From positions 248,001 to 312,000 of the IMG/VR virus record IMGVR_UViG_3300020172_001601: a stretch of 64,000 nucleotides of DNA. One strand, given 5' to 3'. The notes beneath the pieces are model-generated. The model did not search any database, had not been told where the DNA came from, and saw only the letters and a program-made list of their open reading frames with translations. Position numbers and translations under genes: made by a program. Of this stretch, positions 16,675 to 45,325 are shown piece after piece; position 1 is the first letter of the stretch, and each line of letters begins with the position of its first letter.

Positions 16675-17271
16675 CCCAATCCCCTCATGATATTAACACC
16701 AGATGGCATCCTACCAAATCCAGGCAACTTTCCCAGACCAACCCCAGGCTCCGGCAACAAAAGCTCCAAAAACACCCTTTTTTCATGTCGGACGTAAACC
16801 CAATGTGTGAAGGCACTTAGGACACGTTGATGGGAAGTGATGGATTTTAGAGGTAGGAAGGGCCTAGCCAGCCTTTCATTGTGTCCTTTATTCCCCCATA
16901 TCCCCCAGGGAAAAAGTTCCAGAGGCGTATTTGATGAATATTGGAAAGAAAATGTATATCGTTGTGAAGCGATATATGAAAAACAAAAAGAAATGTGTGA
17001 AGGGAAAAGTATCCAAGGGGATCATGATATATTCAGGACCAACTAAGGACACAATAAGGCAACGATATATTTTTCAATATTGAGTTCTAAGGTAACGCTG
17101 CCTTATCTTACCTTTAGTTTTTGTTAGTTGCCCTTGATTGCCTTTTGATTGCCTTCGCTGACTTTGTTGCCTTTTCGTCCTGGATCGCCGCCTTTAGTTG
17201 ACTATTGTTGGCTTTTGGCCATTTAGGTCTATTGTACCCTTGCTTTTAGCCAATGGATGATTGGTGTGCCG

Positions 17272-17308
17272 AAGGGAGCAGTTAGGGGAACCGACTGCTC
17301 CCTTTTTT
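17272..17308 (+). terminator. Intrinsic terminator
   Basis: gggagcagtt...gactgctccc followed by T6. Confidence 0.8.
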
Positions 17309-17535
17309 GTTGCATAACGGGTACAAATGAGGTCAGGTCTATTGTACCCTAGCGGGCTGTTCGTATTTTCGGGTTTGGTTGGAGTCAGCGATGGTCACAT
17401 GCTCATATTGTGGTGGCAAAGGATATGACGTAAAGGACGTGCCGGGGACGAGCAAGCAGTGTCCTGTTTGCAAGGGTTCGGGAGAAGTGAAGCGTTAGGT
17501 CTGGTGTACCCTGGGAGTTGTCGGAAGAAATCGAC

Positions 17536-17565
17536 TTGAACCAAACATGGGTTTGGCTCTCTAGG
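17536..17565 (+). promoter_or_regulatory. Second motif class TTGAACC-N14-CTCTCTNGG (also at 19917, 20581, 24581)
   Basis: Four copies with an identical 14-nt spacing and unrelated spacer sequences. Confidence 0.75.
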
Positions 17566-17583
17566 TGTTTCAGGAGACAATAA

Positions 17584-18681
17584 GTGCTGCAACAAAACCA
17601 ACGCATCTTCTTCGGCCCGAAAGACCCTTGGGGTCATACGGAGCCGAGTGAGGAGCAACGTCGGGAAGCTGTATCCCGGACGAATGTGGCTTCGCCGTTC
17701 GCCAAGTTCATTGGGAACGACAAGGCTATTCGTAAATTGCAAACCGCTGCGTACAAGGCATTGGGTCAGTTCAACCATATGATGCGGGATTTGGCATTTG
17801 CCATTTTTGGCCCGTCATCGGCTGGGAAGACCACCATTGCCCGGTTGTATGCTGAGGTTGTGGAGCTTCCGTTTGTCGAGATCAGCCCGAAGGCGATCAA
17901 GACGGTGGACGATTTGTTCAAGGAAATCAGTCGGGTATTGGCCGAAGCTGGCCTGCCGCTGGTGGAAGTGATTCGTCGTGGTCATTACGTTCTGCCTCCT
18001 GTGGTCATCCTGATTGACGAAGTTCATGCTTTGTCGGATGGGGTTGTGCAGGGGTTGCTGAAGGCAACGGAATACAATGACGCAATGATGGCTACGGAAT
18101 CGGGCAAGACGGTGAACACCCACAATGTAACGTGGATGATTGCCACGACCGATGAAGGGAAGCTATTTGATGCTTTCCGTACTCGGTTCAGCCCGGTGAA
18201 CCTGAAGTATTTGGGCAAGGCCGATGTTGCCAAGATCGTTAAGCTGGCGAACCCAGATTTGAGCGATGATGTGTGCAGCATGGTTGCCCATTACAACAGC
18301 CGTATTCCTCGCAAGGCATTGGAATTCGCCCGGTATATGCGCCTGGTGAAAGATATGTCAGGCGGGACGTGGGAAGAGGTTGCCCGGCAGGTGGCCGAGG
18401 ATGAAGAGATTGACGAGCATGGGATGCACGCCGTCCATCTGAAGATTCTTCGGGCATTGGGTCAGGGGCCGATTGCCCGGAACCGTATTGCATTGGTGGC
18501 TGGGCGTAAGGATGAAGAGGTTGAGAAGTTCATCCTGCCTTGGTTGTTGACTGAGACTGACGATCAGGCCGCTTTGGTGACTGTATCCAGCAAGGGCTAT
18601 ACAATTACTGAGGCTGGGCTTGCTGAGTTGGAACGGCGGGCGATCAACCACAAGGGCGAGAAGGCTCTTGTGGCGGCTTAG
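17584..18681 (+). CDS. ruvB: RuvB-like AAA+ ATPase (Holliday junction branch migration)
   Basis: FIGN, GPSSAGKTT, IDEVH, ATT..G.L...RTRF, PRKA sensor, C-terminal wHTH with GP...E....PWL...KG..IT; order matches RuvB. Confidence 0.85.
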   Translation: MLQQNQRIFFGPKDPWGHTEPSEEQRREAVSRTNVASPFAKFIGNDKAIRKLQTAAYKALGQFNHMMRDLAFAIFGPSSAGKTTIARLYAEVVELPFVEISPKAIKTVDDLFKEISRVLAEAGLPLVEVIRRGHYVLPPVVILIDEVHALSDGVVQGLLKATEYNDAMMATESGKTVNTHNVTWMIATTDEGKLFDAFRTRFSPVNLKYLGKADVAKIVKLANPDLSDDVCSMVAHYNSRIPRKALEFARYMRLVKDMSGGTWEEVARQVAEDEEIDEHGMHAVHLKILRALGQGPIARNRIALVAGRKDEEVEKFILPWLLTETDDQAALVTVSSKGYTITEAGLAELERRAINHKGEKALVAA

Positions 18682-18799
18682 GAAAATATCAACACGCTGC
18701 ATATTGGGCGGTAGTACCTGGGGGACCAGCGAATCATCGGTGTCGAGGCCGACGTGTTGACTTTAGGTCTAGTGTACCCTGGCTGTCGGAGGAACAACA

Positions 18800-19270
18800 A
18801 TGAATACCAGAGTTGAAAAGCTGACGGCCAAGGTTGCTGCGGTGAATCGGGCCAACGAGTATGCGGCACGGTTATATGCTGCACTCGTCGAGAAGTTTGC
18901 CCCATTGGTTGGGCAGAAGATTCTCAAGGTAGATGGCACGCTGCTCGCCAAGTATGAGGGGCTGGTGCCGGTGCTGCCTTGTTCGCCCGATCTGCACGTT
19001 TACCGGCATTCGTCCGACTATTCGTTGGCGTGGACTGTGAAGACCTGCGAGTTCATGCCGCCGCATAGCTGCATGTACCATGAGGTTACGGTTTATGTCG
19101 GCGATCTTCGGGGTGCGACCTTGGAGAAGATGACTGTCCATCCGTTCACGGGTCGCACGGATTATTCTGTGGAAGAGATCACGGCGAAGCGGTTGTCGTA
19201 TGAGTCGGCGAAGCGGGTGGCCGATGAGCTTCGGGGCGAATTGTATCCTTTTGGGGAGGACGACCGATGA
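18800..19270 (+). CDS. Hypothetical cassette protein
   Basis: Motif, then GGAGG RBS. Confidence 0.8.
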   Translation: MNTRVEKLTAKVAAVNRANEYAARLYAALVEKFAPLVGQKILKVDGTLLAKYEGLVPVLPCSPDLHVYRHSSDYSLAWTVKTCEFMPPHSCMYHEVTVYVGDLRGATLEKMTVHPFTGRTDYSVEEITAKRLSYESAKRVADELRGELYPFGEDDR

Positions 19271-19410
19271 AGCGGATCAAGAAGACATATAAGACGCTCA
19301 AGCAGGCCGAGCGTTATCAGAACCGATTGTACAACAAATACAACTCGGTTCAGTTGGTTTCGTTTCCTCGATTCAGTGAGGACGGCGAGTACGTTTGGGA
19401 AGTGGCTTAG
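19267..19410 (+). CDS. Small hypothetical protein (47 aa)
   Basis: GGAGG RBS, ATGA overlap, stop is the motif TAG. Confidence 0.65.
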   Translation: MKRIKKTYKTLKQAERYQNRLYNKYNSVQLVSFPRFSEDGEYVWEVA

Positions 19411-19461
19411 GTCCAGTGTACCCTAGTGGGTGTTCGATTCAAAATCACACAGGAGAGTTCG

Positions 19462-19914
19462 ATGCCTTATGTTCCGAAGCACTTGGAGTTCTTGTCTCAT
19501 TCTGGAACTGCGGACGGCTGGCCCGCTGGGATAACTGAGGTTGGCAAGGAGTTTGCCACCAAGCGGGTTGCTGCTGGCTTGGAGAAGTATGGCCAGTTGA
19601 CGCTGGACACGGCGAAGGGTTGCATTTTCGATCATTACATTGACCGGGAGCCGGTGCCGGAAGAGTTGAAGGGTGTGACGTGGGATTGGTTGTATGGTGT
19701 GACGCATCGGGCGTTGCTGGCGGCATCAGCGCAGCAGGTGTGGGTGGCCGAGAAGTCTTACGTCAAGAAAAAGAAGACGAAGAAGGAATGGCATCCGGTG
19801 GCGGTGAGTCGTGCCGACGTTGAGGCACTGGAGACGGCGGGGACGGTGACGTTGGGTGTGACGGGTGAGCGGGTTCGGGCTTTGGCTGGTGTTCTTGGTC
19901 AACTGGTCAAATAG
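19462..19914 (+). CDS. Hypothetical cassette protein
   Basis: AGGAG RBS. Confidence 0.75.
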   Translation: MPYVPKHLEFLSHSGTADGWPAGITEVGKEFATKRVAAGLEKYGQLTLDTAKGCIFDHYIDREPVPEELKGVTWDWLYGVTHRALLAASAQQVWVAEKSYVKKKKTKKEWHPVAVSRADVEALETAGTVTLGVTGERVRALAGVLGQLVK

Positions 19915-20176
19915 CGTTGAACCAAACAACCTCTCAACTCTCTTGGGTATTGTAAGGGGTTGAGAGTTTACTTCGGATCGGTCAAACAGGGCGGGTGATC
20001 TTCGGACTGCCGCCGAGTTTTGTGAACGAGTAAAACATGCACTGGCCGTAGTTCGTGCGGGAGTGAGTCCCGCTTGGGTCACAGGACCGACCCTAGCAAG
20101 TGGTCCCTGCCAGTAGAACGCCGAACCGGGCAACAACCCATGCAATACACTTCTGGATTTTTTCTCTTCTTTTGTT

Positions 20177-20221
20177 GAAACGTCCGGGAGGCCCAGCACG
20201 TCTGCCTCCCGGACGTTTTTG
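20177..20221 (+). terminator. Intrinsic terminator
   Basis: aaacgtccgggaggc...gcctcccggacgtttt. Confidence 0.85.
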
Positions 20222-20300
20222 TTTGCTCACCAAGGGTACAAATGGGCTGAGGTCTATTGTACCCTAGTCGGCGTCAACGCAACTTTTCAAAGGGAATGAA

Positions 20301-20534
20301 ATGATTCGAGAAGCAAAGTGTATTGGTGTTGAGGGTGACGAAGACGGCGAGTTCAGTGATCTGGTCGGTACTTCGGGCAAGCTGCGGCTTGACGACAAGA
20401 GTACGGACAGTGCCGTGAACTGGTTCAATGGTGGTGGATCGGTCAACTTCACTCGTCGCCGGGTGGCTGAGAAGGATGGCGTGGTGAAGGTATTCACGAA
20501 GTTGGGGAACGTCTTCAAGTTCAGATTGGTTTAG
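20301..20534 (+). CDS. Hypothetical cassette protein
   Basis: Stop is the motif TAG. Confidence 0.7.
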   Translation: MIREAKCIGVEGDEDGEFSDLVGTSGKLRLDDKSTDSAVNWFNGGGSVNFTRRRVAEKDGVVKVFTKLGNVFKFRLV

Positions 20535-20634
20535 GTCCAGTGTACCCTAGCTGGTGTCGGAAAGAAAAAAAGAGATCGCCTTGAACCAAGTGTTTGGTTG
20601 GCTCTCTCGGATAGAACACACAGGAGACTTTACG

Positions 20635-22218: not shown

Positions 22219-22319
22219 CATCAATTGAGCCTGTGTGTGACGGACGGGGGACTGCCAACCCCGTCCGTTTTTTTGTTTATTGCGGTAGGTCTATTGTACC
22301 CTGGGTGGTGGAGGGACAA

Positions 22320-22577
22320 ATGAGAAAACGAATCGTGTTGAATGGTCGGAACGAATACGATGGAAGTCCATCGCATTACTGTTTTGATTTCGATGTCAAG
22401 TTCAATCGGCATGGCAACATTGAAGTGATTGTTGACAAAACGTCATCTTCGTTTGTTTCCTTTTTCCGTGCTGGCAAGTACGTCTTCACTCGGTCGGGCT
22501 TTTGCATTTCGCATCCTGCATCGGAGCGATATCGCTATCACAAGGTCAATGCCGAACTGGTTGAGAGTCACACATAG
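22320..22577 (+). CDS. Hypothetical cassette protein
   Basis: GGAGG RBS; stop is the motif TAG. Confidence 0.7.
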   Translation: MRKRIVLNGRNEYDGSPSHYCFDFDVKFNRHGNIEVIVDKTSSSFVSFFRAGKYVFTRSGFCISHPASERYRYHKVNAELVESHT

Positions 22578-22608
22578 GTACAGTGTACCCTAGTGGGTGG
22601 AGGATAAC

Positions 22609-22812
22609 ATGAAATATGAAAAGTGGATAAGAGATCATCTTTGTGATGTTCATTTTCAGAGCAATGGTTCTACGGGTGGTTGGACTGTTAAGACTTGGGT
22701 TGGCTTTGTGAATGGCTTTATTACAACGGAACATTTTGGTTCTTTGCCGCCTGTGATGGACGAAGTGGTTGAATCTATTCTTAGGAAGGTTGGAAGCAAT
22801 GACGAACGATGA
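22609..22812 (+). CDS. Hypothetical cassette protein
   Basis: GGAGG RBS. Confidence 0.65.
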   Translation: MKYEKWIRDHLCDVHFQSNGSTGGWTVKTWVGFVNGFITTEHFGSLPPVMDEVVESILRKVGSNDER

Positions 22813-23020
22813 ATTTGAAGAGTTGCAGTCTGAAGCTGGCGACTTGGAAGGTCAGTTGGACGAAGCGAAGGATCACTTGAGTAGTGTCACGAGTTGCGAA
22901 ACGCAATCGGACTTCAAGGCGAACCTTACTGAGCTACGGCAAACTCTGACTGTGCTATTGGCTGAAACCACTGATTTGTGGCAGCGTGCTGGTGGTCGTC
23001 CTGTTCGGAAAGCCAAATAG
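22799..23020 (+). CDS. Small coiled-coil protein
   Basis: Stop is the motif TAG. Confidence 0.65.
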   Translation: MTNDEFEELQSEAGDLEGQLDEAKDHLSSVTSCETQSDFKANLTELRQTLTVLLAETTDLWQRAGGRPVRKAK

Positions 23021-23044
23021 GTCCAGTGTACCCTAGAGGGCATC

Positions 23045-23374: not shown

Positions 23375-23425
23375 CTCCAGTGTACCCTAGTGGGTGTTAC
23401 TTCAACAATTCACGGAGACTATGCG

Positions 23426-24255: not shown

Positions 24256-24308
24256 GTCCAGTGTACCCTAGTGGGTGTTCCAACAACGAAACCTTTCTGG
24301 AGGATGCG

Positions 24309-24578: not shown

Positions 24579-24646
24579 CATTGAACCTAATCGTCAGGTT
24601 GCTCTCTAGGTGTTTGTGAAACCTTCCTTTCTTTGGAGACAGAAGC

Positions 24647-27331: not shown

Positions 27332-27355
27332 GGGGATCGCTTCCTCTTGTGTGGC

Positions 27356-27502
27356 ACGGCGGTACTTTAATGGCAGAAGGCGGCTCCAAGCAAGGTTCGA
27401 GTCCTTCTTAGGCTGGAGTTCTGGAGAGTTAGCTACTCTTTGGACCTCCCCCTTTGCATGGAGTACGGGGCGGCAGTGCGGGTTCGACTCCCGCTCGCTG
27501 TG
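27356..27502 (+). ncRNA. tRNA-like RNA with expanded anticodon domain
   Basis: Acceptor ACGGCGG/TCGCTGT, D-arm CTTT-AATGGCA-GAAG, T-arm GCGGG-TTCGACT-CCCGC; ~95-nt structured middle region. Confidence 0.7.
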
Positions 27503-27561
27503 TTTTTAGGTCTGGTGTACCCTAGTGGGTGTTACGAAACTTTCCTTTTGGAGAACGAACT

Positions 27562-28056: not shown

Positions 28057-28155
28057 GTTTGTGAAGGGCAGCGAAAGGCAGGGGTATATCCCCTGCCTTT
28101 TTTTGTGTCCATATTGTTTAGGTCTATTGTACCCTAGAGGGTGGAGGATAAGAAA

Positions 28156-29690: not shown

Positions 29691-30401
29691 ATGAAAGAAC
29701 TCGAAGCTGCGTTGAACGAAGAGTTGGCGAAGGTGCTGGGTGCAAAGCACAACTGGATGGGCGTGATTGCCGGGGTTGCCGGTCGCCGAGCCAGTGAGTT
29801 TGCCCGGACGAAGAACGGTTTGCTGGAAGACGTTGTGACCGACGTGACTGGCGACATCATTCTTCAGGCGAAGGAAGGCAAGCTGGCGGGTGCGGTGATT
29901 CGTGCCAAGGAAGCATCCCATACGGATGAAGAACTGGTGGAGAACTTACGGCACGTCGTCATGAAGGCGGCGTTCTACCGGGTGAGTGATGCCATGAAGT
30001 GGCGCTATCGCAGCGGCACTCAGTTCAGCCAGATCAGTGCTGAGAATGACTTCTCCGAGACTGTGGAAGCTCGCCCGGAAACCGAAACCGACTTGACCTA
30101 TTACACGGACCTGTTGGTGAATGAGTTGGAAGTGATGGCGACTGCTGCCGACTGGAAGCACAATCGCACCGGGAACCCCAGCTATCCGAAGCAGGCGAAG
30201 CGGTTACGGAAGTCCAAGGAAATGGTGCCGGATCGGGTCGAGGGGATGGCGTTGAAGGATTTGATGGAGAAGTACAGCGTCGGCAGCAAGGGCGGGATGC
30301 AACAGCATCTTGACGACATTGGGCAGGCACTTGCCCGTGTTGCCGGTCGGCTGGGTGATCCTACCTTGGTTCGAGGGACCAAGGGGATCGAGGTTGCTTA
30401 G
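29691..30401 (+). CDS. Divergent ECF-type sigma factor-like protein
   Basis: Region-2-like EDVVTDV...LRHVVMKAAFYRVSDAMKWRYR; region-4-like EGMALKDLMEKYSVGSKGGMQQHL; 236 aa. Confidence 0.5.
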   Translation: MKELEAALNEELAKVLGAKHNWMGVIAGVAGRRASEFARTKNGLLEDVVTDVTGDIILQAKEGKLAGAVIRAKEASHTDEELVENLRHVVMKAAFYRVSDAMKWRYRSGTQFSQISAENDFSETVEARPETETDLTYYTDLLVNELEVMATAADWKHNRTGNPSYPKQAKRLRKSKEMVPDRVEGMALKDLMEKYSVGSKGGMQQHLDDIGQALARVAGRLGDPTLVRGTKGIEVA

Positions 30402-30455
30402 GTCCAGTGTACCCTAGTGGGTGTAACAACCCACTAGACTTTGCGAGGGAATCAA

Positions 30456-30740
30456 ATGCCAAAAGGTCAATTGCCAAAAGATCAAATTGTATATCAGGTC
30501 GTCACTAAAGGTGGCGGCGTTGATGGTCGGGACCATACTGACAAGGGCGGCAACATCAAGTTCGCATCCTTTGATCGTGCCGAAGCTGAGAAGCAAGTCA
30601 CGGCATGGGATGACCTGAAGTTGGTTGCCATGAGTGGCAAAGAATTGCTGGCCCTTAAAAAGAAGGTCTTGGCAAAGTTGGACGGTGTTGAAAAGCTGGT
30701 GCTTGAGTTGCCCGCAACGGTGCGGACGAACAATTGGTAG
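30456..30740 (+). CDS. Hypothetical cassette protein
   Basis: Stop is the motif TAG. Confidence 0.7.
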   Translation: MPKGQLPKDQIVYQVVTKGGGVDGRDHTDKGGNIKFASFDRAEAEKQVTAWDDLKLVAMSGKELLALKKKVLAKLDGVEKLVLELPATVRTNNW

Positions 30741-33966: not shown

Positions 33967-34268
33967 GTAATCGCAAATTACAACACCCAGCACGGGTGGA
34001 ACGCCGAGAGCCACAGGAGTAAGCACAGAAAGCATCCTCGCTGCGAAAACAATCGAGGATCGACCCGGAATAAGCCGGTCAGACAGAGTGTGAAGGCAAG
34101 AGGGTAAGCCCCTCCCACAATATATCACTCTGAATCAGTGTGGCCACACTGAGTCTGATCGAACGAAGAAGGGCAGTGCCGAAACGACTGGACGGGCGAA
34201 AGTCAGTCACTTGCTGTTGCACAGTGCATCGAAGACCGAAGGGGACGCCCTTCGGTTTTTCTTTTTTC
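33967..34268 (+). ncRNA. Candidate structured ncRNA (~300 nt)
   Basis: Lies between the motif and a terminator; no convincing ORF; at least 6 hairpins. Confidence 0.55.
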
Positions 34269-34325: not shown

Positions 34326-34514
34326 ATGAACGAACAAGAATGGCTGGAAGCATTCAATGCCGAGTTCCTGCGTAAAACCGGCATCACATGGGCAGACGGT
34401 GGGCTGGAAGATCAGGACGCCATCAATCGCTACTTCCCGGAAGACGTGAAAGACGCTGTTCTCCAGCACATGGAGAAATACGACTTGGACGACGTGACCC
34501 AACTGTGGGCATAG
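34326..34514 (+). CDS. Small acidic protein
   Basis: Stop is the motif TAG. Confidence 0.7.
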   Translation: MNEQEWLEAFNAEFLRKTGITWADGGLEDQDAINRYFPEDVKDAVLQHMEKYDLDDVTQLWA

Positions 34515-35331: not shown

Positions 35332-35437
35332 CACTGACCGCACGGCAACACTGACAATGTTGCCGTGCTTTTTGTTGGTCGTTGTTAGGTCTAGTGTACC
35401 CTATTGGGTGTAACGAACCCCAACCTGCGAGAATAAA

Positions 35438-36269: not shown

Positions 36270-36506
36270 AGAGGATCATTCAGGTCTGTGAGCAGCGGGG
36301 TAACTGGCAGGGAGGCATCCTGTCAGCCTGAATCGAGCGATGGTAAGGGCCAGCGAGGGGGCTGGACATTCGACTGTATTAGGTTCCAGCCCTGATGCGA
36401 CCGAATGCCCCTCGCTGGCACCTGCCTGCATTCAAACCAAGGGTACAAATGACCTTACGTCTATTGTACCCTAGTGGGTGTAACAAACAACAAGAAAAGG
36501 AACACA

Positions 36507-37413: not shown

Positions 37414-37448
37414 CTCCAGTGTACCCTGGTGGGTAAGGAGATCAAACC

Positions 37449-37742: not shown

Positions 37743-38146
37743 TGTACCCTACATGGCAACACGGTATGGCTGCTCAAGTGGTGTTGCAGCATTGCTTGAG
37801 CATAACACGAGGAGAGAAAAACCAATGGGCAACTAATTCCCCGATGATGACAAATAGGCGATGCAACAAGCCTTGATCGGACGCAATCGTGCTGCAATAC
37901 GATTGAACAAGACAAGAAACGACTGCAAGACCTTGCTGTTTAGGGGCGACCATACGGAATGTCGCAAAACTTAGCCGTGCCGAATTGGTCAGTGCGCAAA
38001 GCAGAGAAAACCAGCACCAGCTACCACTGGTGAAAGGCATCGGTAGAGCAGGTTGGAGTCCTGCAAATCTGGTTTTCTCTGCTTTGGGCATAGGTCTAGT
38101 GTACCCTAGTGTGTGTAACGAACACTCAACCCTGCGAGACAAGAAC

Positions 38147-38512
38147 ATGGCCGACTTGAAAGAAAAGATTGCTGAGTTTGTGAAGGCCGCTGACGAAGTG
38201 TCTGCCGCTTATTGGGAGCGACAGAAATTCACCTTCGCCAAGCCGACGCAACACCGTGCCGACTTCATCAGCGACAAATGGGTGCGTGTCGTGTCTCTGG
38301 ACGTGCCGCATGAAGGCCCGCCAGTCGTGTCGTCGGTCTATGCCTTCATCGCCCTGCAAGACGGCCACACGAAGACGCTGGGAGCAATCAAGGCGGGCGA
38401 CATTCACAAGCCTGCCGGGTTCAAGGCCCCTGCCAAGCACGCACGGGGCAACGTCTTCGAGGATGACTTCCGCAAGGCTATCCAGCCGAACGGCATCGTT
38501 TACTTGAAATAA
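38147..38512 (+). CDS. Conserved phage hypothetical protein (GDI.KPA..KAPAK.ARGN family)
   Basis: Recognisable motif. Confidence 0.75.
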   Translation: MADLKEKIAEFVKAADEVSAAYWERQKFTFAKPTQHRADFISDKWVRVVSLDVPHEGPPVVSSVYAFIALQDGHTKTLGAIKAGDIHKPAGFKAPAKHARGNVFEDDFRKAIQPNGIVYLK

Positions 38513-38644
38513 TACAACGCAGACTAGGCCAGTCTGCGGGGGAGCCAACGAGCGGCTATGCCAAGCAGGAAACTCCCCTGAAATCACAGGTCCAGTGTAC
38601 CCTGGTGGGTGTGAATAACACCCACCACTTCTAAGGAATGCGAG

Positions 38645-38872
38645 TTGACTTACCAAGAATTGAAAGCAAAGGTCAGTGCAGCACTTGGCGACGTTGGATT
38701 TTCCATCGAAGCGACGGACGACGGCCAGTTGGTCATTTATACCGACTTGAAAGAAGTCGAAGATCAGGACGAACTGGAGAACTACGAGCCGACGAATGAA
38801 CCCTTGGAATCATTGGACGACTTTCTGAGAGAAGAGTTGGGCGACAAAGACGCTTCCCTGTTTCTCAAGTAG
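38645..38872 (+). CDS. Small acidic protein
   Basis: AAGGA RBS, TTG start; stop is the motif TAG. Confidence 0.65.
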   Translation: MTYQELKAKVSAALGDVGFSIEATDDGQLVIYTDLKEVEDQDELENYEPTNEPLESLDDFLREELGDKDASLFLK

Positions 38873-38926
38873 GTCCAGTGTACCCTAGTGGGTGTAACGA
38901 ACAACCTCAACACGGAGAACTCTGCG

Positions 38927-39157
38927 ATGGCTATTACGCTGACCCCTTCCTATGGTCGTGACTACAAGAACGGCAAAGAAGTCCAAGAAGCCTGGGACGC
39001 TGGCAAGGACTTCACGATCAACTCCATCGGCCACCCGGACGATGGGCGGCAGATCAACAAGCAGGACGCCGAACGTGAGGGCGGCACCTTCAACATCCGG
39101 TACAAAAAACTGACCCAGATCAAGGTCATCAAGGTCAAGAAGGTCGCTGCGGCTTAG
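38927..39157 (+). CDS. Conserved phage hypothetical protein (PxYGRDYK...W..GKDF)
   Basis: GGAG RBS; stop is the motif TAG. Confidence 0.75.
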   Translation: MAITLTPSYGRDYKNGKEVQEAWDAGKDFTINSIGHPDDGRQINKQDAEREGGTFNIRYKKLTQIKVIKVKKVAAA

Positions 39158-39178
39158 GTCCAGTGTACCTTACACAGT

Positions 39179-39435
39179 GTAACGCCTCCCAAACATCGGC
39201 CTTGGGCAAGCCAATCAATCAGAATAAAGGAACCCCTTCCCATGAATGTCTGAAGTCCGCTAACTCCCCGGCGTAGTCATCCACGTTAGAGCGGGGCGGG
39301 ACTGCAAAGCGATGGCCGCACGTCAGCAATGGGCAGCATTGTGCTGGCTGACGTGTGAATGAAGTGCCTCCCAAACATTGGCCTTGGGCAAGCCGAAAGC
39401 AAATGCGTAGGGCAGGACCAACCTGCCCTTTTTTT
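39179..39435 (+). ncRNA. Candidate ncRNA bracketed by two 29-nt direct repeats
   Basis: gcctcccaaacatYggccttgggcaagcc at 39184 and 39366; terminator at 39410-39435. Confidence 0.6.
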
Positions 39436-39490
39436 GTTTTTGTTTGTGTAGGTCTATTGTACCCTAGAGGGTGTAACAAGCGAACAACAT

Positions 39491-39628
39491 GGCGGCGTAG
39501 CTCAACTGGCTAGAGCAACCATCATTATCGTAGCGATTGATCGGGGGTCCACGGTCAATGCGGCCAACGTGTGTACAGCGTTGGTTTGAGAGGATGGGAA
39601 GACGGGGGTTCGATGCCCTCCGCTGTCT
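39491..39628 (+). ncRNA. tRNA-like RNA with ~70-nt insert replacing the anticodon loop
   Basis: GGCGGCG/CGCTGTC acceptor, GCTC-AACTGGCTA-GAGC D-arm, CCATC/GATGG stem, GGGGG-TTCGATG-CCCTC T-arm. Confidence 0.75.
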
Positions 39629-39743
39629 GCTTACACTGTAGGGCATTTGCCCGAACAACGAGGCGTCAGAACACGCCTACAACCCCGAAAGGGGAGAGAG
39701 TGTAAGGTAGCCGTAGTGTACCCTAGTGGGCAGGAGAACAACA

Positions 39744-39902
39744 ATGCGAAAAACTGAAGGGGCAACCAAAGCCCACGCCTCTGTCGGGTATCACAAACAC
39801 CTTCGACCATTCGGCAAGCGACTGGCGAACAAAGCCACTCGCAAGAATGGCAAGCGTAGCACCAGTGTACCCTATGGGGCAGGAGACAAACATGGAAATT
39901 GA
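39744..39902 (+). CDS. Small basic protein reading through the motif (STSVP)
   Basis: AGGAG RBS. Confidence 0.55.
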   Translation: MRKTEGATKAHASVGYHKHLRPFGKRLANKATRKNGKRSTSVPYGAGDKHGN

Positions 39903-40263
39903 AGACGTGCGAAATACCCGATCCATGAGAATGGACCCGGAAAGCCCTGCGGAATACGACGAGATGGACGCCATCACCGCTGGCCCCAATGGTATGAAAT
40001 TGATGCCAGTGTTCAGCGGTGAGATGTTTCAACAGTCCGTTGCCTATCCCGTCATCGTGGAAGCATGGGACAAGAAGAACAGCGGACGCCACAAACGCCG
40101 ATGGGAAGCGACATTCACCCAAGCCGAACGGAACAAGATCAGCCGGTATTATGGCCGGTTTTACCGCTGGTATCTGGTCAGCGGCACGCCCAAACGTGTG
40201 TCACTGCAATTGAACACCTTGACCCTCCTGCAAAGGGCAGTGAACTTCTTCGCTGAATGTTAG
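39892..40263 (+). CDS. Hypothetical cassette protein
   Basis: AGGAG RBS; stop is the motif TAG. Confidence 0.75.
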   Translation: MEIEDVRNTRSMRMDPESPAEYDEMDAITAGPNGMKLMPVFSGEMFQQSVAYPVIVEAWDKKNSGRHKRRWEATFTQAERNKISRYYGRFYRWYLVSGTPKRVSLQLNTLTLLQRAVNFFAEC

Positions 40264-40284
40264 GGCTAGTGTACCCTAGAGGGC

Positions 40285-40578
40285 ATGATGAAAGACGCAT
40301 ACGGAAACGATCAAGTATATCTGGTCCAGCCCACAACTCTGGACTATGAGATCAGCTATGGTGGCGATGGTGTCAAAACATGCCAAGAGGGACGCTATCG
40401 ACACTATTTCACTGCCAGTGCTGGCGGTTTGTCGGGTAGCATTAGAATTCAATTGAACCGAGTCAGCGCCGAACGGTTTGCTGCCTATAACGGCCTGCGG
40501 TTGATAACCGACGTTGAACGTGAAGAAATTCAAGAAAGGTGGAGCGTCAGAGTGCCGGATTGGTCCAGTGTACCCTAG
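40285..40578 (+). CDS. Hypothetical protein (predicted leaderless)
   Basis: ATG exactly 7 nt after TACCCT; ends SSVP inside the next motif. Confidence 0.7.
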   Translation: MMKDAYGNDQVYLVQPTTLDYEISYGGDGVKTCQEGRYRHYFTASAGGLSGSIRIQLNRVSAERFAAYNGLRLITDVEREEIQERWSVRVPDWSSVP

Positions 40579-40615
40579 ACGGTGTAACGATCACTCAACC
40601 CTGCGGAGAATGACA

Positions 40616-40867
40616 ATGGTTCAATTGAAAGTCGTGGCTGTGTCGAGCAACCACAATAGTTTCGGCCTGCGAAACATGATCCTCATCGGGGACAATGGCG
40701 AAGGCTGGCAAGCTGCGGCCAATGACCTGAACGTGAAGCCGAAGGATACCATCCTGCGGATACCCGAAGGGCAGGACATTCCCACGTTCCTGACGCTGCA
40801 ATCTTTCGAGATTCCTTCACAACTGGCCGACCCGCCTGCCGAACTATTGAAAGAAGTTTGGGGCTAG
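40616..40867 (+). CDS. Hypothetical cassette protein
   Basis: GGAG RBS; stop is the motif TAG. Confidence 0.7.
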   Translation: MVQLKVVAVSSNHNSFGLRNMILIGDNGEGWQAAANDLNVKPKDTILRIPEGQDIPTFLTLQSFEIPSQLADPPAELLKEVWG

Positions 40868-40925
40868 GTCCAGTGTACCCTAGAGGGTGTAAGGAACACT
40901 TCAGTCCTCTGCGAAAGGCAATGCG

Positions 40926-41261
40926 ATGTTGAGCCACAAAATTGCGATTTACATTCCTTCCACTGTCAACGGCAATCAGCCCGCCCCGGTTGATATGATC
41001 GAACGGTGGGTGCGGGCCAGCAAGATCAAGCTGGCCAACCTGTTCGGTGGGTTTACGACCTACAACGGGCAAGGGGGATGGTACTCGCCCGAACACGGTT
41101 TGATCGAAGAGAACGTGATTATCGTTCAAGCGTTCACCGATCAAGAGGGGCTGACCAAACTGGACAAAGTGAACGAACTGGCGAAGGAAATCGCCAGCGA
41201 CATGGGCCAGGAAATGGTGTCGGTCGAAGTCGATGGAACACTCAACTTCGTGACAGCGTAA
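40926..41261 (+). CDS. Conserved hypothetical protein (FGGxT...G.W...E, DUF3574-like)
   Basis: Motif pattern; followed by a terminator. Confidence 0.7.
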   Translation: MLSHKIAIYIPSTVNGNQPAPVDMIERWVRASKIKLANLFGGFTTYNGQGGWYSPEHGLIEENVIIVQAFTDQEGLTKLDKVNELAKEIASDMGQEMVSVEVDGTLNFVTA

Positions 41262-41329
41262 GGCAGGGACGGGCAGTAATGCCCGTCTTTTTTTCTGAGT
41301 TTGTGTAGGTCTATTGTACCCTAGAGAAC

Positions 41330-41596
41330 ATGAGAGTCAGCAACACATTATTGATTTCCCTGTTTTATGAACCGGGAACGTCACATATTGCCGGAATTGA
41401 AAACCGAGCAATACAAGCGATGGAATTGGGGATGATTTCAGAACTCCCCAAGATCACTGTGGCGAAAAGTGAGAAGACACCATTCTGGCACTTGAAGCTG
41501 GAAGTCAAGGATGAAGATCGGCCATTCTGGTTCGGTTTTTACTTAGGGAAAGACTTCTGCATCAACAATCGACCAATCACTGTCGGCTGTGATTAG
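41330..41596 (+). CDS. Hypothetical protein (predicted leaderless)
   Basis: ATG exactly 7 nt after TACCCT; stop is the motif TAG. Confidence 0.7.
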   Translation: MRVSNTLLISLFYEPGTSHIAGIENRAIQAMELGMISELPKITVAKSEKTPFWHLKLEVKDEDRPFWFGFYLGKDFCINNRPITVGCD

Positions 41597-41650
41597 GTCC
41601 AGTGTACCCTAGAGGGTGTAAGGAACACTTAACCCCCTGCGAGATACGCC

Positions 41651-41836
41651 ATGCCGAAGAAAATGGATCATGCCGCCTACCAACGTGGTCTGCGGTCGAA
41701 GTCGGTTGCTCAACTCCAATTTATTGCGAAGGATGCCAACGAAGCCGCCACGGTTAACCCGCAAGGCGAAAACGCTGGCTACTACGCCGACGAAGTGCAT
41801 TATGCACTCGCCGAACTCAAACGTCGTCAAGGATGA
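41651..41836 (+). CDS. Small conserved phage protein (YY.DE.HY...EL.RR)
   Basis: Follows motif and leader. Confidence 0.7.
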   Translation: MPKKMDHAAYQRGLRSKSVAQLQFIAKDANEAATVNPQGENAGYYADEVHYALAELKRRQG

Positions 41837-41841
41837 AAAAC

Positions 41842-42012
41842 ATGAAACTGGCAAGCATAGCGGTCGCATTCCTCCTGTTGGCGGGATGCGCCGCTCCTCC
41901 GAGACATTGGGAAGCTCCCCGTGAGCATTACCACAAGGAATTAAGCGTCGAAGTCCGGGAAAGCGGCGATGGCCGTCCCCAAGTCGTTGCTACGTTCAAA
42001 ATCACCAACTAG
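41842..42012 (+). CDS. Small lipoprotein
   Basis: MKLASIAVAFLLLAGC lipobox; stop is the motif TAG; not in the ORF track (56 aa). Confidence 0.7.
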   Translation: MKLASIAVAFLLLAGCAAPPRHWEAPREHYHKELSVEVRESGDGRPQVVATFKITN

Positions 42013-42066
42013 GTCCAGTGTACCCTATATGGTGTGAAGGACACCAACAAAAAGGGAAACCAAGCC

Positions 42067-42252
42067 ATGCACACAACGACCGCACGAAAGGACAACAAGA
42101 AAACAACAATCGTTCTGCCGCCGCTTCCACCGTGGCAAGTGGCGAAGGGACACCAACAACACCGTGGCGGGGCAGGCACTCACGCCGACCGCCGCACGAA
42201 CCGTCAACGGACACGAGCCGCCCAACAACGGGCAGCAGTGTCAGATGACTGA
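42067..42252 (+). CDS. Small basic protein
   Basis: Follows motif; H.D.R..R.RTR motif. Confidence 0.6.
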   Translation: MHTTTARKDNKKTTIVLPPLPPWQVAKGHQQHRGGAGTHADRRTNRQRTRAAQQRAAVSDD

Positions 42253-42434
42253 AAGGCACCATCATGTGCAAACTAAACTCTAAGGCAAGGAGGCTGCAAA
42301 AGGCAAGACGTTGGGCTGAAAAGATGCTGATCGACCTGAAGACGTGGCCCGGTGGACTTGAAGACTTCGCCGAAGCACTTAGGTCCAGTGTACCCTATAT
42401 GGTGTGAAGAACACTCAACCCTGCGAGATCAATC

Positions 42435-42662
42435 ATGAAGACCGAACCGAAGACGTTCCGCTTGGGCAGCAACGACATGGTTTCTGCCCCCGGCATCCTC
42501 AAGTGGGCCATGAATGGCTACAAATTCAAACGTGACCGCAAGAAGATGGTCAACGTGATGAAAGCGTGGGAGGGCCTGACCGATGCCCAATGGGGCAAGG
42601 TGCTGGCGGGTGAAATCCCCCACACCATCGAAGGCGATGTCGTGGTAATCACCATCGAATGA
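42435..42662 (+). CDS. Hypothetical cassette protein
   Basis: Followed by a terminator at 42668-42697. Confidence 0.7.
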   Translation: MKTEPKTFRLGSNDMVSAPGILKWAMNGYKFKRDRKKMVNVMKAWEGLTDAQWGKVLAGEIPHTIEGDVVVITIE

Positions 42663-42755
42663 CAACAAAGGGCAGCAAGTCGCTGCCCTTTTCTTTTATG
42701 TTTTTGTGTAGGTCTATTGTACCCTAGTGGGTGTCACACAAAGGAGACAATTGCG

Positions 42756-43103
42756 ATGATTACCAAAGTATCTGCTGACACGTTTCACAATGATGTTTAC
42801 CACCACGATGGCCCTGTCGTCGTGACCTTCGGCTATACGGGCTGCGGCCCATGCCGTTCCTTGCAACCCAGCCTTGAGAAGCTGGCCGAAACTGGCGTCA
42901 AGGTCGTCAAGGTCGATATTGTCGATGACCCTGACATTGCCACGCACTTCGGCATCAGCAGCGTGCCGACAACCCTGTTCTTCGCCCGTGGCGAACCACG
43001 ATTGTCGTTCAATGGCGTTGCCAACGTCAAGAAGCTGCAAGCACTGCTGGCTGAAGCCGTGGCCGATGGCGAGAAGTCGCCCGCCGACCACGCCCATGCC
43101 TAG
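42756..43103 (+). CDS. Thioredoxin
   Basis: YTGCGPC active site; FGISSVPT cis-Pro loop; stop is the motif TAG. Confidence 0.88.
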   Translation: MITKVSADTFHNDVYHHDGPVVVTFGYTGCGPCRSLQPSLEKLAETGVKVVKVDIVDDPDIATHFGISSVPTTLFFARGEPRLSFNGVANVKKLQALLAEAVADGEKSPADHAHA

Positions 43104-43157
43104 CCCTAGTGTACCCTATAGGGTGTGATGGAACGAAACCTTCAACGGAGAACTGCG

Positions 43158-43397
43158 ATGGCTAACGGTTGGCATGAAGACTTTGAAGACGAAACCTTCC
43201 CGCCCGAACTGCACGAGCAGGAAGACTGGAGCGAACTCGAAGAAGACTTCGACGACGAAGAGTTCGACGATGACGAATTCGAGGACGATGACGGCGAACT
43301 GGCCCGTGACCTGATCCTTGAACGTCAGGAACTCGAAGACTTCGAGGGCCTTGATCCCTTCGAGGATCGCTACGACTACGAAGGCGACGGCTTCTAA
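43158..43397 (+). CDS. Extremely acidic small protein (DNA-mimic candidate)
   Basis: About half of the residues are D/E, interspersed with aromatics. Confidence 0.7.
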   Translation: MANGWHEDFEDETFPPELHEQEDWSELEEDFDDEEFDDDEFEDDDGELARDLILERQELEDFEGLDPFEDRYDYEGDGF

Positions 43398-43513
43398 GGG
43401 CAACGAAGGACAGGGAAAGCCTCCCTGTCCTTTTTCTTTCTGAGTTTGTGTAGGTCTATTGTACCCTAGTGGGTGTGTCGAAGAGAACGAAACCTGTCCA
43501 ACGGAGAACTGCA

Positions 43514-43699
43514 ATGGTGACTGCGACCATCGAAGGCAACGAACTCGTGATTCGCCTTCCCCTCAACACGCCCCGGCCCAGCGCCACGGGCAAGACGCTC
43601 GTGGTTGCCACGAGCAGCGGCAACAAGGCCACCGAAGCCGAAGTCAACGGGCAAAAGGTAGTCGTCGGCGTCAACGCCTACATCTACCCGCCCAAATAG
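43514..43699 (+). CDS. Small conserved protein (PSxTGKTxVVA...GN...GVNAY)
   Basis: GGAG RBS. Confidence 0.75.
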   Translation: MVTATIEGNELVIRLPLNTPRPSATGKTLVVATSSGNKATEAEVNGQKVVVGVNAYIYPPK

Positions 43700-43779
43700 T
43701 CAACAAAAGGCAACACTAGGGTACGTCCAGTGTACCCTAGTGTGTGTTGGGATCAATCACCTTCACTCAAGGATCGACC

Positions 43780-44025
43780 ATGCGAGTATTGGCTAAGACG
43801 TTCGGCTGGCTTGTCGTCAGTGGGCTTATCATCTTCATCAGCAACCTGAGCGCCGGTGTCGATTGGAAAGTCGCCCTGATCGGTGCGGCTGTTGCGAAGA
43901 TCGGCACGACCATTGCCTACTTCTTCTACGAAATCGGCTTCGAGAAGGCGTGGAAACGTCAGCCAAAGGCAACGACGGTCACGGCAACAACGGCATCGGC
44001 AACGCCATGCCCTTGCCCGGCTTAG
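43780..44025 (+). CDS. Small 2-TM membrane protein (DUF2061-like)
   Basis: KT..W...K...YF.YE pattern; stop is the motif TAG. Confidence 0.65.
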   Translation: MRVLAKTFGWLVVSGLIIFISNLSAGVDWKVALIGAAVAKIGTTIAYFFYEIGFEKAWKRQPKATTVTATTASATPCPCPA

Positions 44026-44093
44026 GGCTAGTGTACCCTAGAGGGTGTCCAACACGGACGAACGACAACCCCCTGCGAATGAGGAACTGAGTT

Positions 44094-44501
44094 ATGGCCA
44101 CTACTGAAGTCAAGCTGGTATCGGAAATCATCGAAGCTGTCCCCGGCGTCAAGCGTGCGTTCCACGTCTTCACGCCAGCCCTTCAGCATCGCCTTGAGAA
44201 CAACGCCAGCAACCTGCCGGTGATGGCCCTGCGGTCTTCAATCCACAACTACGGCAAGATGAAGCTGTACGCTCGCATCGAATGCCTTGGGCCGTCCAGC
44301 CTTGACCCGCTGTTCGGCAACCCACTGCCCGGCACGGGTGGCCGTGGCGTGGCAATCATGTTCACCGAATTCCCCCTTCGGGTATGGTATCCCGAAGGGC
44401 AAAAGCCCCCGGTCGTTGACACGCCGGACGGACGCAACCCGAAGGACATACTTGAGGAAGTCAAGCTCAAGTATGAACTCGCCTTCCACGACGATTTCTA
44501 A
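44094..44501 (+). CDS. Hypothetical cassette protein
   Basis: GAGG RBS; terminator at 44510-44540. Confidence 0.75.
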   Translation: MATTEVKLVSEIIEAVPGVKRAFHVFTPALQHRLENNASNLPVMALRSSIHNYGKMKLYARIECLGPSSLDPLFGNPLPGTGGRGVAIMFTEFPLRVWYPEGQKPPVVDTPDGRNPKDILEEVKLKYELAFHDDF

Positions 44502-44855
44502 TCGTCAGGAAAGGGCAGCAAGTCGCTGCCCTTTCTTTTTGTTTATGTTTGTGTAGGTCTATTGTACCCTAGAGGGCAAGGAGATCGGCACATGACCTTT
44601 CGAGAGTGGTATCGGATGACCGAACGTGAGATTCGGTGGAATCGCAGTTTCCTGTATCGTGTCTTCAACAAGATCGGACTCGCATGATTCGCAAAGCTCT
44701 GGCCTTCGTGGTCAACGTCTTCAACTTCCTCGTTCCTGCGAACCAAGGGCCGCAACCGACGCCGCCCAACTACTTCGGCCCCTGCCCGTAGTAGGTCAAG
44801 TGTACCCTAGTGAGTGCGGGCAATGTCGCCCGCCTCACTCTTGGGGTTTTACAAA

Positions 44856-44996
44856 ATGAAAAAGAAACATCGCAACGACAAGAACCACGGGCGCAACGGC
44901 TGGGTCGGTGGCAACCCACGCTATGCGGGCAAGGGATTCAAGAAGGGCGACCGAGCCAAGGCAAAGGCCGAAGCCCGTAGGTCCAGTGTACCCTAG
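44856..44996 (+). CDS. Small basic protein ending RRSSVP inside the motif
   Basis: K/R/G-rich; last unit of the array. Confidence 0.5.
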   Translation: MKKKHRNDKNHGRNGWVGGNPRYAGKGFKKGDRAKAKAEARRSSVP

Positions 44997-45325
44997 TGAG
45001 CTAGTGTACCCTATGGTGCATAGTGCATAGTGCATAGCATAGACTATGCACTTCTTTATTCAAAGAAGCATAGGGTACAATAGCCCTAACAATGTTGCAT
45101 AATTAAAAACAAAACAATTATTCGAGAAAACATTGGGTACAATAGACCTACCCACCCCCTCCCCCACGCAATGACTGTGTTTTCTTTTTAATGTCCAAAA
45201 GAAAAATCCTGGCCGGGGAAAACAAAAATCGCAAATCGGCAATTTTGAGTATGTCCTGCCACGATTTTGAGTTTTTGTGTGAACTCATCCTGAAAAAATC
45301 GCCGGGGCAAAAATTCTGGCCCTGG

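What the first reader, a model, noticed from the sequence alone, without database searches (positions are those of the whole stretch)
17224..45020. The array motif has the internal grammar of a promoter (TACCCT -10, fixed +1)
Seen: TACCCT keeps the T, A and final T of a -10 hexamer. The next 7 nt vary, but position 7 is a pyrimidine and position 8 a purine in nearly all copies (agtgggt|g, agagggc|a, caagggc|a, tgatggt|g, acatggc|a, tgctttt|a). Two ATGs sit exactly at position 8 (40285, 41330). Two RNA stems start exactly there (33967, 34536). Established: Y|R is the bacterial start-site rule. Inference: a promoter class with a TAGGTCYA element at about -23 to -16 instead of a -35, read by a phage RNAP, sigma factor or activator.
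Basis: partly seen in the sequence, partly recalled or inferred. Interest (0 to 1): 0.8.

Follow-up and report, generated by a model that had tools for sequence, protein, structure and literature searches.

The report
Per-gene promoter boxes in a jumbo phage
A 28-kb block of a roughly 340-390 kb freshwater jumbo phage carries 60 same-strand copies of a 17-base box, one in front of almost every small gene, that is most likely a phage-specific promoter and also marks where gene cassettes are swapped between related phages.

Summary
A weight-matrix scan finds 60 copies of TAGGTCYA-KTG-TACCCT, followed by a looser AGNGGGT-GT. All are on the + strand between 17224 and 45003. None occurs elsewhere in the window, and no exact copy occurs elsewhere in the 340-kb contig.

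The boxes sit 7-86 nt (mode 35-42) before start codons, and also before one tRNA and two apparently non-coding units. The TTG variant lies 16-20 nt behind strong intrinsic terminators. The GTG variant usually supplies the stop codon (TAG) of the upstream gene. This layout fits a promoter best.

Orthologous copies in related phages keep nt 1-6, 8-17 and 23-26 but let nt 18-22 drift. One relative has changed nt 4-6 in all its copies together. Homology blocks between relatives break at the boxes, as with T4-type PeSL cassettes.

There are no transcript data. No sigma factor or RNA polymerase was found in or near the window. Y|R holds equally at nt 17|18. The start site and the reading enzyme therefore remain inferred. 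I rate it a new variant of a known kind.

The parts
17224..45003 (+). Array of 60 boxes (26 nt each: 17-nt core plus 9 semi-conserved nt). Starts: 17224 17334 17496 18764 19408 20249 20532 22286 22575 23018 23372 24253 25304 25922 26470 27074 27507 28119 28363 29163 29636 30399 30738 31121 31551 32840 33492 33943 34277 34512 34841 35386 35987 36456 36666 36923 37411 37734 38091 38587 38870 39155 39449 39708 39857 40261 40560 40865 41306 41594 42010 42380 42709 43101 43451 43722 44023 44554 44792 44978
   Evidence: Weight-matrix scan and listing; spacing 110-1754 nt, median 383
30399..30424 (+). Typical GTG-type (class A) copy. TAG at nt 1-3 is the stop codon of ORF 29691-30401. A 5' hairpin follows, then ATG at 30456.
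39449..39474 (+). Typical TTG-type (class B) copy, 20 nt after a terminator stem. It is followed by a tRNA-Leu gene with an insert.
39409..39429 (+). Intrinsic terminator stem before copy 39449
28073..28101 (+). Terminator, 12-bp stem plus T run, 18 nt before copy 28119
34231..34260 (+). Terminator 17 nt before copy 34277
35340..35368 (+). Terminator 18 nt before copy 35386
41265..41290 (+). Terminator 16 nt before copy 41306
42667..42691 (+). Terminator 18 nt before copy 42709
43405..43433 (+). Terminator 18 nt before copy 43451
44507..44537 (+). Terminator 17 nt before copy 44554
20198..20216 (+). Terminator before copy 20249, with an inverted half-box GGGTACAA in between
40261..40287 (+). 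Copy whose position 8 is the A of the ATG of a 97-aa ORF (possibly leaderless)
41306..41332 (+). Copy whose position 8 is the A of the ATG of an 88-aa ORF
45072..45088 (-). Weak TTG-type copy on the opposite strand, facing the end of the array
45134..45150 (-). Second weak opposite-strand copy
45002..45012 (+). 5'-truncated extra copy (TAGTGTACCCT) overlapping the tail of copy 44978; it is full-length in relative L005
39491..39628 (+). tRNA-Leu(GAG) with a 62-nt insert, the unit behind copy 39449
33967..34260 (+). Unit with no ORF of 30 codons or more starting within 130 nt after the box, between copy 33943 and terminator 34231-34260
39179..39429 (+). Unit with no ORF of 30 codons or more starting within 130 nt after the box, behind the degenerate copy 39155. 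It has an internal 29-nt repeat (39184-39212 and 39366-39394) and ends in a terminator.

Best explanation
The box is the core promoter of one class of genes in a jumbo phage. Those genes form a 28-kb region rich in small genes of unknown function, probably expressed early or in the middle of infection. An RNA polymerase with phage-determined specificity binds the 17-bp core. The invariant TGTACCCT would act as the -10-like recognition and melting element, and TAGGTCY as the upstream specificity element. Transcription would start at the conserved purine 8 nt after TACCCT (nt 25). Host multi-subunit RNA polymerase redirected by a phage sigma-like factor is favoured as the enzyme. A phage polymerase is not excluded. 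TTG-type copies restart transcription 16-20 nt after intrinsic terminators. GTG-type copies are internal promoters packed against the preceding gene, whose stop codon is the TAG of the box. The repeated box also serves as a stretch of homology at which gene cassettes are gained, lost or replaced. Shown: the anatomy, conservation, concerted variation and breakpoints. Inferred: promoter activity, the start site and the enzyme.
For: There are 60 copies on one strand only, confined to one block. Exact copies are absent from the rest of the 340-kb contig. Copies lie 7-86 nt (mode 35-42) upstream of start codons with Shine-Dalgarno sequences. They also precede a tRNA and two units with no ORF. Eleven of 13 TTG-type copies follow intrinsic terminators. 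By the scripted T-rich-tail test the count is 9/13 against 1/47 for GTG-type copies, p = 4e-7. The first copy follows a 550-bp non-coding gap, and two copies lie on the - strand downstream of the last called - strand gene. In orthologous copies nt 1-6, 8-17 and 23-26 are constrained while nt 18-22 evolve at the background rate. One relative has switched nt 4-6 in all copies, with GTC becoming TGT. Sigma-70-type promoters are not enriched in the region. The terminase places the phage among T4-core jumbo phages. One of these, PA5oct, depends on host RNA polymerase (PMC7318152). The distant relative Tunturi_5 has two sigma-factor genes and no annotated RNA polymerase.
Against: No RNA data exist for this phage. 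No sigma factor or RNA polymerase was recognised in the window or in about 25 kb of flanks. A contiguous 17-bp core of 29 bits looks more like a promoter for a single-subunit polymerase than any known sigma-type promoter. The TG lies directly against TACCCT, one base off the canonical extended -10 position. Fifteen of 181 unique copies have a hairpin that needs nt 18-25 in the RNA, against 3.7 expected. The concerted change of nt 4-6 could come from gene conversion among copies rather than from a changed reader protein.
Confidence: 0.72

Rival explanations
1. The box is a promoter for a phage-encoded RNA polymerase, single-subunit T7-like or another non-canonical enzyme. The 17-nt core would occupy -17 to -1 and the start would be at nt 18 (A) or at the GGG of nt 21-23. 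This differs from the best explanation only in the enzyme and the start site.
For: The core is contiguous, 17 nt long and carries 29.3 bits. T|A at nt 17|18 meets Y|R in 57/60 copies. The positions that switch in the relative (nt 4-6) would fall at -14 to -12, close to where T7-type promoters carry specificity (established knowledge). Hairpins that begin at nt 18-19 and show compensatory variants are enriched, 15/181 against 3.7 expected.
Against: nt 18-22 evolve at the background rate in orthologous copies, and nt 19-20 reach 42-45% against the type-2 relative. The first transcribed bases of T7-type promoters are conserved. CCCT would be an unusually G+C-rich melting region. No polymerase gene was seen in the window or flanks. 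The giant 3112-aa ORF next to the window shows no polymerase similarity. Phages related by terminase rely on host polymerase.
Confidence: 0.2
2. The box acts in RNA. It would be a recognition or cleavage site for a sequence-specific endoribonuclease that cuts long transcripts into single-gene mRNAs, or a stabilising element. It would not be a start of transcription.
For: UGUACCC (nt 10-16) can pair with GGGUGUA (nt 21-27) through four Watson-Crick-only positions, one A-U pair and two G-U pairs. Some downstream hairpins begin right after the box. Most GTG-type copies have no terminator in front, so read-through RNA must contain them.
Against: Copies sit directly after strong terminators, after a 550-bp non-coding gap, and on the opposite strand downstream of the last called - strand gene. 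Little or no upstream RNA would reach these places. The 5' arm is invariant, so there is no covariation. nt 21-22 drift while nt 23-26 do not, which is not the pattern of a stem. No nuclease candidate was identified.
Confidence: 0.08
3. The box is mainly a DNA recombination site, a linker for cassette exchange comparable to an integron attC site, with no direct role in expression.
For: 44 of 73 homology-block ends between relatives fall inside the box footprint, against 11.8% expected.
Against: No recombinase or integrase lies nearby. The distances to start codons and to terminators are fixed, and the orientation always follows the genes. The box has no attC-like imperfect palindrome. Homologous recombination between any 26-nt repeat would give the same breakpoints. 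Some breaks against the type-2 relative are simply the mismatch cluster at nt 4-6.
Confidence: 0.04

Closest known systems
PeSL cassettes (promoter-early stem-loop) of T4-type phages RB49 and phi1 (Arbiol et al. 2010, PMC2839356)
   Same: Both are repeated intergenic regulatory cassettes in a region full of small genes of unknown function. In both, a terminator stem-loop is joined to a promoter and cassettes carry their own expression signals. Differences between close relatives map to the repeats.
   Different: PeSL promoters are sigma-70-like (-35, -10 and an AT-rich upstream region). This box has no -35 and a non-canonical 17-bp core. Only 13 of the 60 copies are the TTG type that sits behind terminators. 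The box also contains the stop codon of the preceding gene.
Phage sigma-dependent promoters without a -35 element (T4 late TATAAATA with gp55; phiEco32 gp36 type); from my own knowledge
   Same: Both have a single conserved block around -10 with no -35, and a start a few bases downstream. Both define one temporal class of phage genes and use host core polymerase.
   Different: Those elements are 8-9 bp and AT-rich. This one is 17 bp and G+C-rich (CCC), with an adjoining upstream element that varies between relatives. No sigma gene has been found yet.
T7, T3 and SP6-type single-subunit polymerase promoters; from my own knowledge
   Same: Both are contiguous, highly conserved blocks of about 17-23 bp with many identical copies per genome. 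Specificity positions differ between related phages.
   Different: In T7-type promoters the start abuts the block and the first transcribed bases are conserved. Here the 5 nt after the block drift freely. No polymerase gene was detected.
phiKZ early promoters read by a virion-packaged polymerase; N4 early hairpin promoters; from my own knowledge
   Same: Both are phage-specific promoters in front of many small early genes of large phages.
   Different: phiKZ early promoters are AT-rich. N4 promoters need a DNA hairpin with a 5-7 bp stem, and only a 4-bp ACCC/GGGT stem is possible here. No virion polymerase was recognised.

Membership tests
Sigma-70 housekeeping promoter | -35 TTGACA-like hexamer 16-18 bp upstream of a TATAAT-like hexamer | tested here: not met
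   Consensus scan found 9 against 11.6 expected and 15 against 17.4 expected. Upstream positions -40 to -1 of the boxes show no conservation.
Sigma-70 housekeeping promoter | -10 hexamer with T-12, A-11 and T-7 | tested here: met
   TACCCT keeps T, A and the final T in 60/60 copies. The three C are equally invariant, so this is weak evidence.
Extended -10 or phage-sigma promoter (T4 late type) | Single conserved block at -10, no -35, start 6-8 nt downstream at a purine | tested here: inconclusive
   The block is present and Y|R falls at +8 in 58/60 copies. In orthologous copies the discriminator drifts and nt 23-26 are fixed. No 5' ends are available.
Extended -10 or phage-sigma promoter (T4 late type) | Phage encodes the sigma factor | tested here: inconclusive
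   None was found in the window or in about 25 kb of flanks by Pfam or PHROGs. The gp3-like family was not found in the contig. About 300 kb of the genome was not examined.
T7-like single-subunit polymerase promoter | Contiguous conserved block ending at -1 | tested here: inconclusive
   The 17-nt block carries 29.3 bits and is followed by A in 51/60 copies. The start is unknown.
T7-like single-subunit polymerase promoter | Conserved initially transcribed bases (+1 to +3 or beyond) | tested here: not met
   nt 18-22 change at 7-16% in type-1 orthologous copies, where the background is about 9%. Against type 2 they change at 15-45%.
T7-like single-subunit polymerase promoter | Phage-encoded single-subunit polymerase | tested here: inconclusive
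   Not seen in the window or flanks. The rest of the genome could not be reached with these tools.
N4-type hairpin promoter | DNA hairpin with a 5-7 bp stem and a 3-nt loop | tested here: not met
   Only ACCC/GGGT (4 bp, 4-nt loop) can form with Watson-Crick pairs. G21 and G22 vary.
Sigma-54 promoter | GG at -24 and GC at -12, as in TGGCAC-N5-TTGC | tested here: not met
   Aligning by eye on GG gives 4 of 12 matches. The type-2 relative lacks the GG altogether.
PeSL cassette | Promoter joined to a stem-loop terminator in intergenic space of a region rich in genes of unknown function | tested here: met
   This holds for 11 of 13 TTG-type copies. The genes are mostly without known families.
PeSL cassette | Sigma-70-like early promoter | tested here: not met
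   See the sigma-70 rows above.
PeSL cassette | Insertions, deletions and replacements between relatives bounded by the repeats | tested here: met
   44 of 73 block ends lie within the footprint, p about 7e-23. For example, the gene at 40285-40578 is absent from L039, with the junction in a box.
Integron cassette array | attC imperfect palindromes and a nearby integrase | tested here: not met
   No integrase or recombinase family was found. The box is not palindromic.
RNA processing site with a structured recognition element | Conserved stem supported by covariation | tested here: inconclusive
   The 5' arm is invariant, so covariation cannot be measured. The constraint pattern of the 3' arm does not follow the stem.

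The most novel reading that the evidence does not exclude
The box defines a new promoter architecture. It would be one contiguous 17-bp element combining a -10-like part with an exchangeable specificity part at about -21 to -19, read by a phage factor or polymerase with no recognisable relative. The same element would act as stop codon, transcription start and recombination linker. Together these would give huge phages an integron-like system for acquiring and expressing gene cassettes, with the specificity part keeping the cassette pools of related phages apart.
Probability: 0.2. Interest if true: 0.8.

Novelty: new variant of a known kind. Interest (0 to 1): 0.55.

Why it matters
Transcription signals of uncultivated huge phages are essentially unknown. 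This box gives a precise, testable promoter candidate with 60 natural variants in one genome and about 180 across relatives. It also offers a natural specificity switch between two related phages, and a clear case of promoter-bounded cassette exchange outside the T4-type coliphages. If the reading factor is found, the pair could serve as an orthogonal expression system. The box could also be used to mark one class of genes in related metagenomic contigs.

Tried and rejected
- **Nucleotide search:** a near-identity search of the array against GenBank phages found nothing.
- **RNA family scans:** default ARAGORN and Rfam found nothing. A permissive Rfam scan gave only a weak T-arm hit.
- **Literature:** a text search for GTGTACCCT returned only primers.
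- **Other promoter signals:** the T4 late motif TATAAATA is absent from the window. Sigma-70 consensus sites are not enriched.
- **Transcript data:** no RNA runs were listed. Laying DNA contigs on 38001-44000 gave only contig ends and ambiguous joints at the repeat, as expected when an assembler meets a 26-30 nt repeat. I do not count this as evidence.
- **Search for the enzyme, in the window:** Pfam and PHROGs scans of about 100 ORFs found nothing. Language-model look-alikes of two flanking ORFs gave an Imm5-like hit and nothing. tblastn with the Tunturi_5 sigma gp3 and antiterminator gp25 found nothing.
- **Search for the enzyme, in the contig:** the search for gp3 relatives in IMG/VR, singly and as a profile, did not hit this contig.
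- **Search for the enzyme, in the flanks:** walking along the 390-kb ENA contig found only small unknown genes. The giant 3112-aa ORF has no polymerase similarity and only weak tape-measure-like look-alikes.
- **Tunturi_5:** it has no copy of the box.
- **Rejected readings:** CRISPR-like or tandem repeat array (spacing is irregular and filled with ORFs), integron, sigma-54 promoter, N4 hairpin promoter.


Full report
**Observation.** The motif is real and far above chance.
- TAGGTCYA occurs 38 times against 1.7 expected. Thirty-seven of these are on the + strand between 17224 and 44978. TACCCT occurs 71 times against 15.9 expected.
- A weight matrix built from the exact copies finds 60 + strand copies, all between 17224 and 45003. 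It finds none in 1-17000 or 45200-64000, and only two weak copies on the - strand, at 45088 and 45150.
- The core TAGGTCYA-KTG-TACCCT carries 29.3 bits. With the following AGNGGGT-GT the total is 38.8 bits. TGTACCCT is invariant apart from one C-to-T change.
Position 7 after TACCCT is a pyrimidine in 60/60 copies and position 8 a purine in 58/60. ATGs at 40285 and 41330 start ORFs exactly at position 8.
- Two points need correcting. Y|R is met just as well at nt 17|18 (57/60). Of the two cited stems, only the one at 33967 starts there; at 34512 the stable stem starts at nt 19.

**Context.**
- The window is part of IMGVR_UViG_3300020172_001601, a 340,341-bp contig from a freshwater metagenome. 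Contig coordinate equals window coordinate plus 248,000. A near-identical 390,142-bp ENA contig also exists.
- The window encodes a tyrosyl-tRNA synthetase, a CCA-adding enzyme, RNA-repair domains and a T4-type terminase ATPase.
- The nearest terminases belong to an uncultured 595-kb phage and to jumbo phages such as Phosso, PAU, RsoM2USA and PA5oct. A helicase is 39% identical to that of Tunturiibacter phage Tunturi_5.
- The genes inside the array are mostly small and of unknown function. The recognisable ones are two thioredoxins, an AAA ATPase and a KaiB-like protein.

**Anatomy.**
- There are two variants. Forty-six copies have GTG at nt 9-11, one has ATG, and 13 have TTG.
- TTG-type copies sit 16-20 nt behind strong intrinsic terminators. 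The stems end at 28101, 34260, 39429, 41290, 42691, 43433 and 44537. At 17334 and 20249 an inverted half-box lies between terminator and copy. One GTG-type copy, 35386, also follows a terminator (stem end 35368).
- By the scripted test for a T-rich upstream tail, 9 of 13 TTG-type copies follow a terminator tail against 1 of 47 others, p = 4e-7.
- GTG-type copies lie at gene ends. The TAG of nt 1-3 closes an ORF of 50 or more codons in 34 of 60 copies. The TAG at nt 17-19 does so in nine, and a stop at nt 26-28 in four.
- Start codons with Shine-Dalgarno sequences follow 35-42 nt after nt 18 in most copies. In about ten copies the Shine-Dalgarno sequence begins exactly at nt 25. No start codon lies before nt 25.
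- Boxes also precede a tRNA-Leu with an insert and two units with no ORF that end in terminators.
- The first box follows a 550-bp non-coding gap.

**Comparative evidence.**
- Exact boxes occur in only three IMG/VR contigs and a handful of metagenome contigs. Within the 340-kb contig they occur only in this block.
- In orthologous copies of type-1 relatives the background divergence is about 9%. There nt 1-6 and 8-17 change at 0-3%, nt 7 at 19%, nt 18-22 at 7-16%, and nt 23-26 at 0-3%.
- Against the type-2 relative the background is about 22%. There nt 10-17 change at 0-1%, nt 19-20 at 42-45% and nt 25 at 1.6%.
- The type-2 relative (Ga0209702_10001398) carries TAGTGTCA-GTG and TAGTGTAA-TTG in 31 of 44 copies. 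nt 4-6 have therefore changed together in both variants, while nt 8-26 are unchanged.
- Homology blocks between relatives end inside the box footprint in 44 of 73 cases, against 11.8% expected. One example is a clean loss of the gene at 40285-40578 in one relative. Part of this signal against type 2 is just the mismatch cluster at nt 4-6.

**Interpretation.** A promoter explains the following together:
- the strand rule;
- roughly one box per gene;
- restart directly behind terminators;
- boxes before RNA genes and after non-coding DNA;
- high conservation limited to one block;
- the genome-wide concerted change.

An RNA-level signal does not explain boxes behind terminators or on the opposite strand. 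It also gains no support from covariation, because one arm of the possible stem is invariant.

**Where transcription starts.**
- The footprint has three parts: a constrained box, five freely drifting bases, then a constrained GTGT. This fits a -10-like element, a discriminator and a fixed start at nt 25.
- The two ATGs at nt 25 and the Shine-Dalgarno sequences beginning there point the same way.
- Against this, the core is contiguous and as information-rich as T7-type promoters, and T|A at 17|18 also satisfies Y|R.
- In addition, 15 of 181 unique copies have a Watson-Crick hairpin that needs nt 18-25 in the RNA, against 3.7 expected, with compensatory variants. Read-through transcripts could account for these hairpins.
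- I put about 0.5 on a start at nt 25 and about 0.2 on nt 18-21.

**Who reads it.**
- No sigma factor or polymerase was recognised in the window.
- None was recognised in about 17 kb to the left or about 8 kb to the right on the ENA contig.
- The 3112-aa ORF just beyond the right end shows no polymerase similarity.
- Tunturi_5 has two sigma-factor genes, one with Sigma70 r2 and r4 domains, and no annotated polymerase in 300 of its 309 kb. It lacks the box.
- PA5oct, a terminase relative, depends on host polymerase (PMC7318152).
- This favours host polymerase with a phage factor, but about 300 kb of the genome could not be examined.

**Comparison with known systems.**
- In function and evolution the closest parallel is the PeSL cassette of T4-type phages (PMC2839356). 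It shares the terminator plus promoter arrangement, the association with genes of unknown function, and recombination between copies.
- The promoter itself is different. It is not sigma-70-like, sigma-54-like or N4-like, and it fails the T7-type test of conserved initial bases.
- I therefore rate it a new variant of a known kind. It is a solid, testable promoter candidate, and its start site and reader are still to be shown.

Noticed in passing
window 27355-27503 and 39491-39628 (+): ARAGORN with the intron option calls tRNA-Ala(TGC) with a 65-nt insert and tRNA-Leu(GAG) with a 62-nt insert in the anticodon loop. Default ARAGORN and Rfam miss both. The window also encodes RNA-repair and ligase-type domains, a CCA-adding enzyme and a TyrRS, so phage-borne tRNA splicing is possible.
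   Followed up: partly
Tunturi_5 PP885688, loci L013 and L018-L021 (about 45 sites): The cultured distant relative has its own repeated element. It is a hairpin with a variable, covarying stem and a conserved loop GGGTATTAGC. In gene orientation it is preceded by a GATAATC-like box. It is unrelated in sequence to the window's box.
   Followed up: partly
window 17319-17350, 20234-20265, 36441-36472: An inverted half-box GGGTACAA lies 15 nt upstream of TTGTACCC at three TTG-type copies, forming a palindrome across the box. A similar one, AGGGTAC-N7-GTACCCT, lies at 43716-43738. These could be operator sites for a regulator.
   Followed up: no
window 45029-45150: The array ends with a hairpin (45029-45052) that reads as a terminator on both strands, and with two opposite-strand box copies pointing into it. 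These may make short antisense RNAs or mark the boundary.
   Followed up: no
window 11532-11553, 12201-12222, 15018-15035: The neighbouring - strand gene block (9.4-16.7 kb, strongly negative GC skew) has its own repeat, AGTAATTTCAAAGAATGGTTAG on the gene strand, near gene starts. It may be a signal of another gene class.
   Followed up: no
L050:13352-21305 (starts about 414 nt beyond window position 64000): A 3112-aa ORF with no Pfam, PHROG or PDB sequence match. Its weak language-model look-alikes are tape-measure-like virion proteins.
   Followed up: partly
window 39184-39212 and 39366-39394: A 29-nt repeat (GCCTCCCAAACATYGGCCTTGGGCAAGCC) occurs twice within a unit with no ORF, between degenerate box 39155 and terminator 39409-39429. 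It is a candidate small RNA.
   Followed up: no
L053 and L055 (about 17 kb left of the window on the ENA contig): A second block of tightly packed small + strand genes of unknown function has no box copies (weight-matrix scan of L053; L055 was not scanned) and mostly overlapping stop and start codons. Nearby blocks of small genes therefore do not all carry per-gene boxes.
   Followed up: partly
window 1708-1824 and 15512-15625: 39-nt tandem repeats lie inside or next to ORFs.
   Followed up: no
window 48300-49199: The terminase large subunit match covers only a 299-aa ORF (the ATPase part). The gene may be split or interrupted.
   Followed up: no
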